Below, piece by piece: positions 1,076 to 57,858 of a stretch of 64,000 bases of DNA. The stretch comes from Octopus sinensis. Its lineage: Eukaryota. Under the pieces are notes generated by a model that ran no database searches, had not been told where the DNA came from, and worked only from the letters and a program-made list of their open reading frames with translations. The DNA is taken from NCBI RefSeq assembly GCF_006345805.1, contig NC_043014.1:3968001-4032000 (forward strand). The letters run 5' to 3'. How positions within the stretch are numbered: the first letter of the stretch is position 1; each line of letters starts with the position of its first letter. A program made the translations under genes and the position numbers.

Positions 1076-4000
1076 TCAATATTTACTGCAAACAACGCAG
1101 GTTAATTCTTGGCCATTGACATACGGTGGACATGGCCACGAACCACAAGCAGCCTGAACGAAATATAATAGAGCTCCATTTTCGTTTCTGTAACCAGCTG
1201 GATCAGCTTCTGGTGCATAATCCACACACACATATTCATGTCTGCCCTTATGAGCATAATGTTCTGCCATCAAATATCCTGAATATTCAGCTGTCCAACC
1301 AGCGTAACACTGTGTCCTGGCTGGTAACATCATAACAACAGCAGGTTGTAGTGTCAAACAGACAGCGCACGGAACGTTGTGATCATGAAGTGATTTAGCG
1401 TTAGCAAAAGAAAAGAGTTTATTCGAGTTGTGGGATATTTCATATTCACTGCCATAAATGTAACCACCTTTTTCAACTTCTGTAGTATAATTGGCCCAAA
1501 TGGGATCGTTAGGTAAACACAACAGATTGCTTCCGCCACCAGTATGGGTTTGATGTTGTCCACCAACCACACCTAGAATTGGTAAGAATATATCAAGTAA
1601 AAAAGATATTAAGCAAAATAACGGAAATATTCATTACAATTTGACCCTTAAAAGGAGTCATGTTTAGTCGCGTGTGAACGAATTGTGGTGTATGTGTTAG
1701 TGCTTATGTGAGTGTAAGCAGTGTTGCTGTATGCATGAAATCCTAGATGTGCATTTGCATTCTCTTCATATATATATATATATATATATATATATATATA
1801 TATATATATATATCGAAGTAAGCAAGAAGGATATCCAGAGATAATGCAGTACGATTGTTTCATGCAACTCCATTTAATTGAACAATTCAATCATTGCATT
1901 AATTTAAAATATAGAGGAATCTTCAGCTGCACAAATACATAGAATTTAATTAAATTAAAACAGATTGAGACATTAGTATAATTATACCTAAAATCTCCAA
2001 GAAGTTAAGGAGATACACAAAGAACTGCTTGTCTCTACTTCAACTTAGAAGTTAATAAAATTATCAAGAAATTTATGAATACTTATGAATACAATAAGTA
2101 TTCAACAATTTCTATCATTTTGTTATAATATTCTTCTTAATAATCCTTTGGAAAACCCTAAACTTCAACTGTATTCATAGCAACATTGTTTAAAATATTT
2201 AACTATAATATATGATAAGACATTCCGTTTCATTGTCAATAGTCTGCCAGTGTGCGACCCCCTTAATTATCAGCTAACATCTTGTTTTAAGTTTTCCCTT
2301 ACTAAACCTCATGGTATTGCTTATAATGATTCTTGATTTTTTTATAATTATACTAACTAGAATGTATATCTACTCCCTCATCCCTCCCCCTAACAGATAC
2401 TGCCCCATGCTCTCTCAGCCTTAGATATAGAAAGGATTTTTAAACAATTAAAACTGACCCCATAAAGACAAAAAATCAATGGTAAGTTGAGTCTTCTTGA
2501 TAATTTTAGTAACTGCTATGCTGAAGTAGAGACAACATGTTCTATGTAATTTCTTGGGGATTTTAGGTATAATTATACAAATGTGTCCATCTGTTCTAAT
2601 TTCATTAAATGCTACGTCTTTTAGCAGCCGAGGATTGCTCTAAATTTTAAACTGATGTAATGATTGCATTGTTCAATTAACTGGTGTTGCATGAAACGAA
2701 CGTACTGCATTATCTCTGGATATCATCGTTGCTTATTTTAATTTTAATCACCTTAAGTAACATATTCATCTGAATCAATATATATATATATATATATATA
2801 TATATATATATATATATATATATATATATATATATATATATTATATATGTAAGTATATGTATATATATGTTGTGTGTATACGGGTAAGTATTTGGGGATA
2901 CGATGTGGATTATTATGTAAGTTTGCATGGGGATGTGTTTTGCGAGGATGTTAATTGAAGGAGAAAAAGAAAGGAATTCGGTAACGCATGTACTCGTGTT
3001 TATCCGAAATGGAAAATGTGTTCACGAGTGAACGGGGATATTTTGGTGATGGAGTCGGCGATCGATAAAGGATACGTGTAGGATTTATAAAGAGCAGATA
3101 CAGAGCATTTTTAAGGAACGTGAGGTTGATTGGGGAAGAGGTTTGTAGCAGCAGTTTTGAATTGGAAGTTTCGGAATTACCTTACAAAGTTATACTGGAT
3201 AATTAATGAGGTGATGTGGTGCATGAAAAGAGCAAGGTTTTAGCGATAGGACGATTTCGGTGAGGCGGAGAAGAATAGAAGTGCATTCTGTACTCTGTTG
3301 TGTTCTCTCACTAATATTTAGTTTCTCTCTATTTTACTTAATGAATAAAGTCCTTAGCTTTTTCCATCAGTTACAGTATGTGGCTTGTCCAGTCCTCATT
3401 CTACATTGTGCGTTCATTTCATTAAAAATTTACAGTCACTGTCATCAATTCTAATAGACTCTATTAAATTTAGCCCACACCTACGATCATTGGGCACTCT
3501 AGTTAAAGATAGTCAAGTGGCCACTTTTCAGCTCTGGTAACTCACGTACAATAACACCATCCGTAGCCAGTACACTTTATCACCAGTTTGCGGCCTCGGT
3601 ATTTGATATCTACAATCCAAAGCTGGTCAGCCTGAAATTCATGATCGCCATGGTGGTTTTCAGTCCAGCCCCTATTTGTAATTTAACGTAGAGATATCTA
3701 TATTCTGTGGTTAGACAACATCCTTTTCACTTGGTCCGTAGTAGACAACATACAATATTCTGATTTGACCAAATACCTACAAAGAGTAAGCAGTCTTGTT
3801 TAGTGTCTGTATAGTCTACAGGTATAGACGTTTGAAACGTGACATATCATAAGAGGATTTGAGAACGTTTATGTTACACAAGCCGACAAAGGGTGAGTGT
3901 GTGTGCAAGTGTGTGAGAGAGAGGGTGAGAGAGAAAGAGAGGCAACAAAAAGAGAGAATGAGAGGTATAAAAAGAGAACAAGAGGAAAACAAAAAGAGAA

Positions 4001-7000
4001 TGAGAGGTCAGAAATATAAAGTATACTAACCGTCATATACAAGGTTTGAATAAGGAGGACAAGTTGTTCTGCCCCACCGGGTATACAATGATCCGAGACC
4101 GGGTTCTGCGAAATTAAAATGAAATAACGTAGTTTAAAAGAAAGAATTGGGGAATCATTTACAAAGTAGGTTGTTGGATGGGAAGGAATTGATGGAGAAG
4201 AGAGAAATATAGAATTAAAGAAAGAACGAGTGAATGAATGAATGTCAGAACGAAAGATGTAAATAATAAGAATAAATTGTAAAGAAAGAAAAAAGACATT
4301 TGTCTGTTGAGCCTGTTGTTGACGTTGATGTCAAAGATTTGAGAGATTAATCTCAGAATATCAGAATGTGTATCGGTCTCCGCTAAGAACGGATGTATGT
4401 ATGATACGTAAACTTGGGTATGAGTATATATACTTCTCAATAGAATATTGATACAACTCAATAGAATAATGATAAAATATTCGCCAGGTGCGAATATTCA
4501 TCGGTCAATTACAAATATCAGTTTGGAGCTCGGCGCAAATAAGGCCATCATAACTACAATATGAAAATAACAACCATACCGCATCATTTGTCGATTTAGT
4601 TAAAAGACATCGCATCCGGATCTCGAGTAGAGGAGTCCGTTCGATAAATGTATAGCACAACACACCCAACACCGGTGCAACCAGCAAGAAGCCTGCAACT
4701 TAATCTGTGGTGCGTGAGGTGGGAGCACAAAATTGACGGTCTCAGGAAACCAAAGCAGATCAAGAAGGGAACAACCTTTAATAATTGAGAATTAAAACGT
4801 CAAAATTGTTAGATATAATCTGCCTGTAAGATATAATCGGTGTCTCCTCTACAAAATTTCGTTTTTCCGACAGCGTACACTTGGATATAGGCTTGAAACT
4901 CCACTACGCAACTGTGGTGCCAACAATATCTGCACAGGTGGGATTAGGATACTCACAATCCCCAGCTTTCGGATTGTATTATGGAGTGAAACTTACTAGG
5001 TGTGAGGGTTCACCTCTTGAAGCTAAGGCTGAATATGAAAGACCCCTATGGCTGTTGAAAGTATATGCAGCAAACATCGGCGTCAAATACAAATCCTTCC
5101 TAAGCAAATTCACCTCAGCTTTAGATATATTTGGGGTAAAGTCATTTGTCCTGCAAGGTGACTTCAGTGCACACCTTGGCACTGATAACCGTGAGAAGGA
5201 TTGATTGGAAGGAATGTCGTCAGTGAACTTAATGGAGAGGTCATAGCAGCCTTCTGTGCAGGATACACACTTTCCTCTCTATGGTATATATATTATTTTA
5301 AGACAGGGATATCTATAAGGGTGCCTGGTATAGAAATACTTGGTGACAGAGGTTTCTGATTAGGTTCGGTCCTCTTTCACTCTTTGCTGAACGTTCGGGT
5401 AAAAGGAAGGGGTGGAGTTGTCCACTCGTCACTACCTAAACGTCTAAAAACCTGAAAATTCCTACAGTCTACCGAACACTGGAAATTGGTAAGTCCAGTG
5501 CGACCTACAGAATAGAGTTGGAAGGTGCAGTGGATGCTGGGATCAGAAACCAAAATGTAGAGACCTTTGCATCCAAATTGAGAGTGATCCGCCTCAATGA
5601 AGTTCGACATCGAAATGAATTCGTGATTGTATTATTTTTTTCGGCAGGTTCTTCTTCGGTTGAACGCTTATTTGAGCTCAATTCACTTAAAAGTGACAAA
5701 GCTGCTGGTGAAAAGACGTTCGCCTTGATATTTTAGAAACCTTAAATACAGATGATATTCTCTGAGTGACCCATGTACGCTAGGTGGATGGGACCTCTGG
5801 AAAAAACACCAAGGCAATGGAAATATGGGGTGACAATCACAATTTTTTCAAACAGAGACCAAAGATTGTGTTCTAATTATGAAAATGTCTATTCTAGGTG
5901 TCAAGAAAAGATATGTAGGGAAATTGTCGTGCCAAAGGTTACTGTCCTGGACGAACTACACCCGACCTGAAAATCATTCAAAGACAGATCTTCCAGCAAA
6001 CATTGAAATATTTCCAAGGTATATATGCTGTAAACCACGAAAAGGCACACGATCACGTGCCCTGGGGCATGCTGTGCATGGTTTACCAGGAAGGTGAGTT
6101 TGATGGGCAAATACTGGTTGCCATAAAGTACATATGTGGATGTTCAAATGTTTGTATTTATGTAAAAGTCGAAAGTTTTCAACGAGAAGTTTTCACTTAG
6201 TTGAGGTGTGCATTGTTAGTGCCCCTTCTCACATTCTTTTTTGTGATCTGGTTGAATATGCGCAGCCATTGTGGTAGAGGTATCCCAATTCATCTCTACG
6301 TGATCGGTGGCGTGTGATTTGTAGACGACATGCTGCTACCTGATTCGTCTGATGGTCACGAACAACGTGCACTGAATTGGTTGGCTGCCGAGTACACCAA
6401 AGCAGGATTGACAAATACGCACTGTGTAGGAAAGTGGAACATCATTATTTCGGGTCTCTATTCACGAACGATTGGAAGCACAAGAGTGGACAGACTGCTG
6501 AATTGTAGTTATAAACGCAGTGAAACGCCAGCTCGGGCATTTGATTCTCAGATGAAGAGGGCATTCATGCTTTTCGTATGCAAGCCGGCTGGGCTCACTC
6601 TGAGCACTCTAATGATTTCACAGTGAACGAACCGGCCGACGACTAGAACACTCGGAAAGAGCTCCCTCAGAGGAACCGTGCGGGCCGAAATAATTATCGA
6701 CGTAGCACTGCATATATACTCATATACGCACAATAAATGGCATTGTATATTAGAGTAACAATTTATTTAGGAATTTATTGTAAAGTAGAATATATTTTGA
6801 AGTAAATGCAGGCAAGTGTCTTAGTATATACTATTTTGGACATGTGGATAGTAATGTGGAACTAATTCGAAGTTGGTAAAATTGTAAACCATTAGTTAAG
6901 GAGACACGGGTAAAAGACTTTAGCCGTAAAATTAGTTCTTACTTGGTGTGTCATCAGGTTTATCGTCGAGAGATTTCTTGGAGATGAAACGGTTCTGTGA

Positions 7001-57575: not shown

Positions 57576-57806
57576 ATATATACTCATATACACACAATAA
57601 ATGGCATAGTATATTAGAGTAACATTTTATTTAGGAAATTATTGTAAAGTAGAATATATTTCGAAATAAATTCAGGCAAGTGTCTTAGTATATACTATTG
57701 TGGACATGTGGATAGTAATGTGGAACTAATTCAAAGTTGGTGAAATTATAAACCATGACTTAAGGAGACACGGGTTAATGACTTTAGCTATAAAATTAGT
57801 TCTTAC

Positions 57807-57858
57807 TTGGTGTGTCATCAGGTTTATCGTCGAGAGATTTCTTGGAGATGAAACGATT
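57807..57858 (-). CDS. Extra intact exon 2 ([17 protein letters not shown]) of a sixth, truncated unit
   Basis: 52 bp with tttttttacag acceptor and gtaaga donor. Its exon 1 is not in the window. Confidence 0.65.

What the first reader, a model, noticed from the sequence alone, without database searches (positions are those of the whole stretch)
1076..57858. Tandem family of membrane-anchored, collagen-less short-chain-collagen-C4 (NC1-like) domain proteins
Seen: a four-exon gene with matching phases is repeated through the window, and exons 2 and 3 (52 and 75 bp) are invisible to the ORF track. The product is a short N-terminus, one hydrophobic segment ([18 protein letters not shown]), a charged ~40-aa stalk and a Cys-rich domain with a conserved NYT sequon, without any Gly-X-Y. 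Known: this domain caps sponge short-chain collagens and is related to oligomerising collagen IV NC1 domains. Inference: a surface-displayed, probably oligomeric ligand-binding family rather than structural collagen, built like type II lectin or TNF/C1q receptors. I cannot tell from here whether this family is already described.
Basis: partly seen in the sequence, partly recalled or inferred. Interest (0 to 1): 0.85.

Follow-up and report, generated by a model that had tools for sequence, protein, structure and literature searches.

The report
Octopus membrane-anchored collagen-less NC1-like gene array
This stretch of Octopus sinensis chromosome carries a tandem array of real genes for small membrane-anchored proteins whose outer part is the end-cap domain of sponge "short-chain collagens" with no collagen attached; the family is already named by automatic annotation, but this form has not been studied.

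Summary
The window is Octopus sinensis chromosome CM016876.1, about 3.97-4.03 Mb, minus strand. It carries three complete four-exon genes (coding exons of 144, 52, 75 and 497-500 nt, all GT-AG, 255-256 aa). A fourth gene has its first exon beyond the window end and an internally duplicated exon 2. There is also an extra intact last exon.

Each product has a 13-aa N-tail, a 20-residue uncharged segment, a 39-aa charged stalk and a 10-cysteine domain with an NYT sequon. None has Gly-X-Y. Pfam and sequence searches miss collagen IV NC1. A confident AlphaFold model hits only NC1 domains in the PDB, though global superposition is poor. The domain is an internal duplication, as NC1 is.

Collagen-bearing relatives (amphioxus, crinoids, corals) match at E about 1e-47 to 1e-56, so this is the spongin short-chain-collagen-related family. 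Collagen-less and membrane-anchored forms look common across phyla.

My addition is a conserved dibasic or furin-type site in the stalk. It suggests a type II precursor shed as a soluble, probably trimeric domain. Octopod variation sits in four loop patches, with dN/dS below 1.

Function is untested. It is a new variant of a known kind, of moderate interest.

The parts
13742..13885 (-). Gene A exon 1 (coding part): ATG, 13-aa N-tail, 20-residue hydrophobic segment, start of stalk
   Evidence: Kozak context ACCAGAATGG and an in-frame stop 15 codons upstream.
6943..6994 (-). Gene A exon 2 (52 nt): stalk segment [17 protein letters not shown] with the dibasic KK
4031..4105 (-). Gene A exon 3 (75 nt): start of the NC1-like domain ([20 protein letters not shown])
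1076..1572 (-). Gene A exon 4: rest of the NC1-like domain, stop codon, poly(A) signals downstream
26810..26953 (-). Gene B exon 1
22707..22758 (-). Gene B exon 2
19590..19664 (-). Gene B exon 3
16587..17086 (-). Gene B exon 4. It is also the last exon of RefSeq model XP_036366807.1.
41648..41791 (-). Gene C exon 1
37370..37421 (-). Gene C exon 2
34433..34507 (-). Gene C exon 3
   Evidence: coordinates corrected there.
32299..32798 (-). Gene C exon 4
57807..57858 (-). Gene D exon 2a (NRFISKK type). Its exon 1 lies outside the window.
55945..56006 (-). Gene D new 62-nt in-frame exon (SLLDLLCCPETVNIVLPSKT), made of intron-2-derived sequence fused to the last 13 nt and the donor of exon 1
   Evidence: Used in O. 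vulgaris model CAI9737332.1.
54413..54464 (-). Gene D exon 2b (NRVISKK type)
51626..51700 (-). Gene D exon 3
49304..49803 (-). Gene D exon 4
46085..46581 (-). Orphan intact exon 4 copy (ex4') with about 1 kb of intron 3 upstream. It is a candidate alternative last exon of gene D, or a remnant.

Best explanation
The window holds part of a large tandem cluster of paralogous genes in Octopus sinensis.

Each gene encodes a small single-pass protein, most likely type II (N-terminus in the cytoplasm). It has a 13-aa conserved N-tail, a 20-residue signal-anchor and a 39-aa charged stalk. The ectodomain is one N-glycosylated, disulfide-rich domain of about 185 aa, of the spongin short-chain-collagen type. 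That domain is a shortened, divergent relative of the collagen IV NC1 domain, built like NC1 from two homologous halves.

The octopus proteins have lost, or never had, the collagen helix that the domain caps in sponge, coral, crinoid and amphioxus relatives.

I infer that the domain still self-associates, probably as a trimer, since it sits at the C-terminal end of a triple helix or a coiled coil in relatives. I also infer that the precursor is cut at the conserved dibasic site in the stalk by a proprotein convertase. That would release a soluble domain, as happens with membrane collagens XIII/XVII/XXIII/XXV, ectodysplasin A and TNF-family ligands.

Paralogues differ mainly in four surface-loop patches on an otherwise almost invariant scaffold. 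That fits diversification of a binding surface.

Shown: gene structures, architecture, family membership, NC1-type local fold, internal duplication, the conserved dibasic site, the pattern of variation.

Inferred: topology, cleavage, oligomerisation, binding function.
For: Gene models:
- Complete reading frames with GT-AG at every junction in three units.
- The same 144/52/75/~500 structure is annotated by RefSeq for a paralogue in the same species (P0002 on L004).
- Full-length products with the same N-terminal segment occur in O. vulgaris, O. bimaculoides and Argonauta hians.
- An uninterrupted 1104-nt Logan contig (SRR8281674) encodes N-tail, hydrophobic segment, stalk and domain, with an in-frame stop before the ATG.

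Family:
- E = 1e-47 to 1e-56 to proteins carrying Pfam Collagen PF01391 in Branchiostoma, crinoids and Acropora.
- 4940 representative clusters match the profile.

Fold:
- AlphaFold models have pLDDT 86.7 and 92.3.
- Every significant PDB hit is collagen IV NC1 (top 28 and top 30 ranked hits; E 3e-6 and 6e-5; probability 0.92-1.0).
- N-half against C-half by profile-profile comparison gives 95.7% probability, E 1e-8.
- The domain has 10 Cys and no HSQ, as published for spongin NC1 (PMC5395295).

Anchor:
- A 20-residue uncharged run is preceded by a tail conserved between Octopus and Argonauta (SRNISQR).
- Residues -3/-1 at the end of the run are V and L.
- The model has one continuous helix over residues 16-48.

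Cleavage:
- KK, KR or RR lies 13-24 residues (28 in one Argonauta sequence) before the domain in nearly all anchored collagen-less members listed. Exceptions are one amphioxus model with no dibasic pair, one bivalve sequence at -7, and the coiled-coil or long-stalk forms.
- Lineus has RQKR; amphioxus has RERR and KRSKR.
- A peptide of a family member was found in the O. vulgaris ink proteome (PMC10142993).

Variation:
- dN/dS is 0.21 in strands against 0.61 in loops.
- Among 39 octopod domains, entropy is confined to four patches. Two of them are equivalent loops of the two halves.
Against: - No transcript or protein data for these exact genes could be reached. The products of A, B and C are not in the 15-billion-protein collection.
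- RefSeq's only model here (XP_036366807.1) splices differently.
- Charge around the hydrophobic segment is not decisive: net +1 on each side, with more K+R on the C side.
- SignalP and DeepTMHMM were not available.
- In the window genes the stalk site is KK, a weaker convertase site than KR or RR. KK could simply be part of a charged stalk.
- Global superposition on NC1 is poor (TM 0.22-0.42, rmsd 9-18 A).
- Sequence and profile searches do not reach NC1.
- dN/dS is below 1 everywhere, so positive selection is not shown.
- Oligomerisation was not modelled.
Confidence: 0.6

Rival explanations
1. The hydrophobic segment is a cleaved signal peptide. The proteins would then be plain secreted matrix components (collagen-less 'spongin-like' proteins) that are never membrane-bound.
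For: By my heuristic, many relatives have typical short N-terminal signal peptides: 39 of the 102 single-domain representatives, for example amphioxus MVASVYCFLVVVLAGAQA. The C-side flank carries more K+R than the N side. A family member was detected in ink, a secreted fluid.
Against: The uncharged run is 20 residues, against 7-15 for typical signal-peptide h-regions (established knowledge). It starts at residue 14, after a tail conserved across octopods. There is no small residue at -1/-3 (V, L). AlphaFold gives a continuous helix over 16-48.
Confidence: 0.2
2. The proteins stay on the cell surface as resident receptors or adhesion molecules. This is the reader's lectin/TNF-receptor-like idea, and the dibasic residues would be only part of a charged spacer.
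For: The anchor features above apply here too. In the window genes the site is KK rather than KR or RR. Variation concentrates in loops.
Against: The position of the dibasic pair relative to the domain is kept across cephalopods, a nemertean and amphioxus, with full furin consensus in some. The 13-aa cytoplasmic tail has no recognisable signalling domain: Pfam finds nothing.
Confidence: 0.3
3. The locus is one complex transcription unit with alternative 5' and 3' exons, as RefSeq's 40-kb model implies, and not independent four-exon genes.
For: XP_036366807.1 joins 5' exons at 56820-51626 to exon 4 of gene B at 17086-16587, with 100% identity. An orphan exon 4 with an intact acceptor exists at 46581-46085. 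No other gene is recorded in that 60-kb locus.
Against: Each unit has its own ATG exon with a strong Kozak context and nearly identical upstream sequence, its own last exon and poly(A) signals. O. vulgaris and O. bimaculoides annotations, and a RefSeq paralogue in the same species, give unit-by-unit genes. The N-terminal exons of the RefSeq model resemble repeats also found in introns, where they carry stops, and they provide no signal sequence for a 10-Cys domain.
Confidence: 0.12
4. Some or all copies are decaying duplicates (pseudogenes) with no function.
For: Exon 4 as a whole is no better conserved than the flanking introns: about 88% against 85-90% nucleotide identity. Gene D is rearranged and ex4' is orphaned. 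LINE insertions lie in introns.
Against: All five exon-4 copies keep open frames, all 10 Cys and the splice sites. dN/dS is 0.34-0.70 overall and 0.21 in strands. Exons 1-3 are 87-100% identical between copies (92-100% among genes A-C).
Confidence: 0.08

Closest known systems
Spongin short-chain collagens and related proteins (Ephydatia muelleri short-chain collagen C4, UniProt P18503; family of Aouacheria et al. 2006)
   Same: The same C-terminal domain family. NCBI and UniProt name the octopus proteins after it. Collagen-bearing members match strongly (E 1e-47 to 1e-56). The domain has 10 Cys and no HSQ, and is not detected by Pfam PF01413, as reported for spongins (PMC5395295, PMC12749355).
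   Different: No Gly-X-Y at all. An N-terminal signal-anchor replaces the signal peptide. The stalk is short and charged with a dibasic site. The genes form tandem arrays in octopods.
Collagen IV NC1 domain (PDB 1LI1, 1M3D, 1T60, 5NAX, 8TYS)
   Same: It is the only fold found by Foldseek. Both are built from two homologous halves. Both are Cys-rich and extracellular.
   Different: About 185 aa against about 225 aa. No sequence-level match. TM-score is only 0.22-0.42. The HSQ motif is lacking. According to Fidler 2017, spongins lack the domain-swap region. No collagen helix is attached.
Stand-alone NC1 genes of ctenophores (Fidler et al. 2017, PMC5395295)
   Same: An NC1-type domain expressed without a collagenous tail.
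   Different: The ctenophore proteins are collagen IV-type NC1 (with HSQ) and carry a signal peptide. The paper states that such genes exist only in Ctenophora. Here the domain is spongin-type, membrane-anchored, and found in a bilaterian.
Type II membrane proteins with a C-terminal trimeric domain that are shed by furin: collagens XIII/XXIII/XXV and XVII, ectodysplasin A, TNF-family ligands (my own knowledge)
   Same: Layout only: short cytoplasmic N-tail, signal-anchor, stalk with a basic cleavage site, C-terminal globular domain. Anchored relatives in coral, crinoid and amphioxus also carry coiled coil and/or collagen in the stalk.
   Different: The globular domain is unrelated. Cleavage and trimerisation are not shown for the octopus proteins. 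This is an analogy, not membership.

Membership tests
Spongin short-chain-collagen-related family | C-terminal NC1-like domain homologous to that of collagen-bearing members | tested here: met
   E 1e-47 to 1e-56 to proteins with Pfam Collagen PF01391 (Branchiostoma, Anneissia, Antedon, Acropora) over 73% of the query. The direct comparison with Ephydatia P18503 was not run; it rests on the NCBI/UniProt naming.
Spongin short-chain-collagen-related family | Short collagenous (Gly-X-Y) domain N-terminal to the NC1-like domain | tested here: not met
   No run of 3 or more Gly-X-Y in genes A-C or in any octopod hit. These are therefore relatives by domain, not short-chain collagens in the strict sense.
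Spongin short-chain-collagen-related family | Spongin-type cysteine pattern (7 shared with collagen IV plus 3 own) and absence of the HSQ motif (Fidler 2017) | tested here: met
   10 Cys in the domain, all invariant across 60 relatives. No HSQ. The one-to-one mapping of the 7+3 positions onto collagen IV was not made.
Collagen IV NC1 (Pfam C4, PF01413) | Match to the Pfam C4 model or to NC1 sequences | tested here: not met
   No Pfam family at E up to 10. No NC1 chain by phmmer or profile hmmsearch against PDB sequences.
Collagen IV NC1 (Pfam C4, PF01413) | NC1 fold | tested here: inconclusive
   Foldseek: every significant PDB hit is NC1, with probability 0.92-1.0. However TM-scores are 0.22-0.42 and rmsd 9-18 A, so local structure agrees and the global arrangement does not superpose.
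Collagen IV NC1 (Pfam C4, PF01413) | Two homologous subdomains in tandem | tested here: met
   hhalign of N-half against C-half profiles: 95.7% probability, E 1e-8, 57 columns.
Collagen IV NC1 (Pfam C4, PF01413) | Trimer and head-to-head hexamer assembly; sulfilimine cross-link | not testable with these tools
   No multimer prediction or biochemistry was available.
Type II signal-anchor membrane proteins | Uncleaved N-terminal hydrophobic segment of about 20 residues with the C-terminus outside | tested here: inconclusive
   There is a 20-residue uncharged run at 14-33, a conserved N-tail, no small -1/-3 residues, and a helix over 16-48 in the model. Flank charges are ambiguous. No dedicated predictor was available.
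Proprotein-convertase-shed membrane precursors | Basic cleavage motif between membrane and globular domain, conserved in relatives | tested here: met
   KK, KR or RR 13-24 residues (28 in one Argonauta sequence) before the domain in nearly all anchored collagen-less members; one amphioxus model has none and one bivalve sequence has it at -7. RQKR in Lineus, RERR in amphioxus. Actual cleavage was not tested.

The most novel reading that the evidence does not exclude
The octopod cluster is a diversified repertoire of shed or surface-bound NC1-like oligomers. Paired hypervariable loops, at equivalent positions in the two halves of the domain, would form a recognition surface. That would make it a new class of invertebrate recognition or signalling molecule (immune-type or TNF-like ligand) derived from a collagen end-cap.

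More broadly, most 'spongin short-chain collagens' of animals would not be collagens at all. Stand-alone NC1-type proteins would then be widespread in Bilateria and not confined to ctenophores.
Probability: 0.15. Interest if true: 0.75.

Novelty: new variant of a known kind. Interest (0 to 1): 0.5.

Why it matters
The published picture treats the spongin-type NC1 domain as the cap of a short collagen. It states that NC1 genes without collagen exist only in ctenophores (PMC5395295).

Here a bilaterian has dozens of collagen-less, apparently membrane-anchored copies. My crude survey of representatives suggests that collagen-less forms are the majority of complete-looking family members (44 of 63).

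If so, the domain has a life of its own, in self-assembly, binding or signalling. That would bear on how collagen IV was assembled from parts.

For cephalopod biology, the result flags a large, fast-diversifying, lineage-expanded gene cluster with unknown function and messy annotation.

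Tried and rejected
- Pfam on the last exons and on the full product found no family.
- phmmer and profile hmmsearch against PDB sequences gave only chance hits: granzyme A, MGRN1, galectin.
I therefore modelled the 88%-identical O. vulgaris protein P0001 and the O. sinensis domain fragment P0030 instead.
- I searched for exon 1 of gene D in the window and in the extra 2.8 kb of L001. It is absent.
- I considered that exon 4 is under diversifying selection because it is far more diverged than exons 1-3. 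I rejected this as stated: exon 4 is about as diverged as the introns, and dN/dS is below 1 in all partitions.
- I considered the alternative N-termini of RefSeq models as a real non-anchored isoform family. I judged this unlikely. They differ from model to model, resemble intronic repeats that carry stops, and give no route into the secretory pathway.
- Rfam found no RNA family in the window.
- Aouacheria 2006 is not held in the library. What I say of it comes from citing papers and from my own recollection of its abstract.

Full report
**Where the window comes from.** The window is eukaryotic, AT-rich (34-47% GC), and full of microsatellites and retrotransposon fragments. A 57,414-base overlap with locus L001 is identical base for base. 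That places it on Octopus sinensis assembly GCA_006345805.1, chromosome CM016876.1, about 3.97-4.03 Mb, with the genes on the window's minus strand.

**Checking the observation.**
- Five ORFs of 164-179 aa on the minus strand are 77-84% identical to the first.
- Using gene A's exons with 30-nt flanks as BLAST queries, I found three copies of exon 1, five of exon 2, four of exon 3 and five of exon 4, all on the minus strand and in consistent order.
- Genes A, B and C each give an uninterrupted 768-771-nt coding sequence (255-256 aa) from exons of 144, 52, 75 and 497-500 nt.
- The ATG has a strong context (ACCAGAATGG) and an in-frame stop 15 codons upstream.
- Poly(A) signals follow each last exon.

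**The fourth unit is different.**
- It has exon 2 twice (57858-57807 and 54464-54413).
- The DNA after the first copy is homologous to the first two-thirds of intron 2 of gene A: 57549-55954 aligns to 6337-4720 at 90.6% identity.
- At about 55957 that DNA is fused to the last 13 nt of exon 1, its donor and intron 1.
- The fusion creates a 62-nt exon (56006-55945, SLLDLLCCPETVNIVLPSKT) that keeps the reading frame between the two exon-2 copies.
- An O. vulgaris model (CAI9737332.1, 294 aa) uses exactly this six-exon layout.
- The same unit type recurs about 100 kb away on the same chromosome.
- Exon 1 of this gene is not in the window or in the next 2.8 kb.
- The window's 64000-55856 aligns at 95-96% to L005 14968-22888, where exon 1 lies a further 5 kb upstream. 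I therefore expect exon 1 about 5 kb beyond the window end, behind a LINE insertion.
- A fifth last exon (46581-46085), with about 1 kb of intron 3 in front of it, has no exons 1-3 of its own.

**Annotation status.**
- The exact products of A, B and C are not in the 15-billion-protein collection.
- The only gene recorded across this 60-kb locus is XP_036366807.1.
- That model joins two repeat-like 5' exons (56820-56737, 56006-55945), exon 2b and exon 3 of gene D to exon 4 of gene B, 34.5 kb away.
- Its N-terminal exons resemble sequences that occur in introns of A and B, where they carry stops. They give no signal sequence.
- Other RefSeq models in the cluster have different, equally odd N-termini.
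- By contrast, a RefSeq paralogue in the same species (P0002) has exactly the 144/52/75/~500 structure.
- O. vulgaris, O. bimaculoides and Argonauta hians have full-length models with the same N-terminal segment.
- A 1104-nt uninterrupted contig from run SRR8281674 (species unknown to me, 56% identity) encodes tail, hydrophobic segment, stalk and domain, with a stop before the ATG.
- I take the unit-by-unit models as correct and the long model as doubtful. Only reads can settle this.

**The protein.**
- Residues 1-13 form a tail conserved from Octopus to Argonauta (SRNISQR).
- Residues 14-33 are uncharged ([20 protein letters not shown]).
- Residues 34-72 form a stalk with 16 charged residues of 39 (my count).
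- Residues 72 to the end form the domain: 10 Cys, NYT at 118-120, no Gly-X-Y, no HSQ.
- The run is long for a signal peptide, ends in V-I-L without small residues, and is modelled as one helix with the start of the stalk (residues 16-48).
- Flank charges do not decide the orientation.
- A 10-Cys domain related to an extracellular module must be outside the cell, which means type II if the segment is not cleaved. No dedicated predictor was available.

**What the domain is.**
- Pfam finds nothing, nor do sequence or profile searches of PDB chains. This agrees with a report that spongin C-terminal domains match neither PF01410 nor PF01413 (PMC12749355).
- The homologue search gave 440 proteins. 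Octopod ones are named 'short-chain collagen C4(-like)'. Many in amphioxus, crinoids and corals carry the Pfam Collagen domain, at E 1e-47 to 1e-56.
- The family profile finds 4940 representative clusters, 1401 of them at E below 1e-30.
- AlphaFold models are confident: pLDDT 86.7 for the whole protein and 92.3 for the domain alone.
- In both Foldseek searches every significant hit is a collagen IV NC1 chain: E 3e-6 to 9e-4, probability 0.96-1.0.
- TM-scores are only 0.22-0.42, so local structure agrees while the overall arrangement does not superpose.
- The two halves of the domain are homologous to each other (hhalign 95.7%, E 1e-8), as in NC1.
- Together with the published analyses (Aouacheria 2006 as cited in PMC5395295 and PMC12549020; Fidler 2017), this places the domain in the spongin branch of the NC1 superfamily.

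**Architecture across the family.**
- I classified sequences with simple rules: a run of at least 5 Gly-X-Y, and a Kyte-Doolittle window for hydrophobic segments.
- Of the 150 best-scoring proteins in the list, classified the 143 that were new to the session; 102 of them are single-domain and start with M. By these rules 77 lack collagen and 25 have it.
- Among the 63 with a hydrophobic N-terminus, 44 lack collagen, and 24 have an internal anchor-like segment in place of a short N-terminal one.
- Anchored members with collagen and/or coiled coil exist in Acropora, Antedon and Branchiostoma.
- So the collagen-less and the anchored layouts are not octopus oddities. This classification is heuristic, and gene models may be incomplete.

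**The stalk site.**
- In anchored, collagen-less members, a dibasic pair nearly always lies 13-24 residues (28 in one Argonauta sequence) before the first conserved residue of the domain. One amphioxus model (P0074) has none, and one bivalve sequence has it at -7.
- Octopus has KK or KR. Argonauta has KK and KR.
- Unnamed contigs 45-57% identical to the query (source organism not known) have RR or KR.
- A nemertean (Lineus) has RQKR. Amphioxus has RERR and KRSKR.
- This is the layout of precursors that convertases release from the membrane (my own knowledge of collagens XIII/XVII, ectodysplasin A and the TNF family).
- It is the main reason I rank 'anchored precursor that is shed' above 'resident receptor'.
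- A peptide from a family member in O. vulgaris ink (PMC10142993) shows that at least one member is made as protein, but says nothing about cleavage.

**Evolution of the copies.**
- Units are 15.5-17 kb long and 74-95% identical in aligned non-coding DNA (mostly 85-90% between A, B and C).
- Between copies, exons 1 and 2 with their flanks are 95-100% identical and exon 3 is 87-100% (genes A-C overall: 92-100%). Exon 4 is 84-89% identical.
- Pairwise dN/dS for exon 4 is 0.34-0.70. It is 0.21 in modelled strands and 0.61 in loops.
- All five copies, including the orphan, keep frame, cysteines and acceptor.
- Among 39 distinct octopod domains, the variation sits in four patches: domain positions 25-30, 50-57, 64-72 and 122-127. 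Elsewhere entropy is near zero.
- Patches 1 and 4 are the equivalent loops of the two halves.
- This pattern fits a diversifying surface on a fixed scaffold, but positive selection is not shown.

**Cluster size.** Consecutive accessions XP_036366806-824 (O. sinensis) and CAI9737328-345 (O. vulgaris) carry the family name. Members also lie at 3.85 and 6.52 Mb on the same chromosome.

**Literature.**
- Searches for the family name with octopus or cephalopod, and for spongin with NC1 and transmembrane, returned no description of collagen-less, membrane-anchored members.
- Fidler et al. call NC1 without a collagen tail novel and confined to ctenophores.
- Other papers only list 'short-chain collagen C4' in expression tables.

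**Verdict.** The domain family is known and automatically named. The collagen-less, anchored, probably shed form and its octopod expansion are an undescribed variant. Function remains inferred.

Noticed in passing
window 56820-16587 (-): RefSeq model XP_036366807.1 joins 5' exons of gene D to exon 4 of gene B across a 34.5-kb intron. It skips D's own last exon, the orphan exon, all of gene C and exons 1-3 of B. It is either a chimeric prediction or real long-range splicing.
   Followed up: partly
window 57858-54413 (-); also L003 8486-16128 and L005 20874-24705: Internal duplication in gene D: exon 2 plus part of intron 2 is fused to the last 13 nt of exon 1. This creates a new in-frame 62-nt exon and a longer stalk with two dibasic sites. 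The unit type recurs elsewhere in the cluster and in O. vulgaris.
   Followed up: yes
window 46085-46581 (-): Orphan but intact copy of the last exon, with an acceptor and a downstream ATTAAA. It lies 2.7 kb downstream of gene D's own last exon and is a possible alternative terminal exon.
   Followed up: partly
window 58405-63611 (+) and 7836-10026 (-): Non-LTR retrotransposon remains (zinc knuckle, AP-endonuclease and reverse transcriptase in broken frames) lie inside intron 1 of gene D (antisense) and intron 1 of gene A (sense).
   Followed up: yes
window 14304-14928, 27827-30537, 43490-44278: Long (AC)n and (ACAT)n arrays lie 0.4-3.6 kb upstream of exon 1 of genes A, B and C. They produce the many spurious Cys/Met/Tyr/His-rich ORFs in the ORF list.
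   Followed up: no
window 55440-55751 (-): This ORF looks like the C-terminal part of a mariner/Tc1-type transposase by eye. Pfam gave no hit at E up to 0.01.
   Followed up: partly
window 16587-17086 (-), gene B exon 4: Gene B has an eleventh, unpaired cysteine in variable patch 2 (EKCGY). The same change occurs in O. vulgaris CAI9737332.1.
   Followed up: no
representative proteins P0146-P0175: Many top-scoring family members elsewhere carry 3-9 copies of the domain in one predicted protein of up to 3949 aa. They are either true multi-domain proteins or merged tandem genes.
   Followed up: no
window 50439-50865: A 213-bp unit is repeated twice (90% match) in intron 3 of gene D.
   Followed up: no
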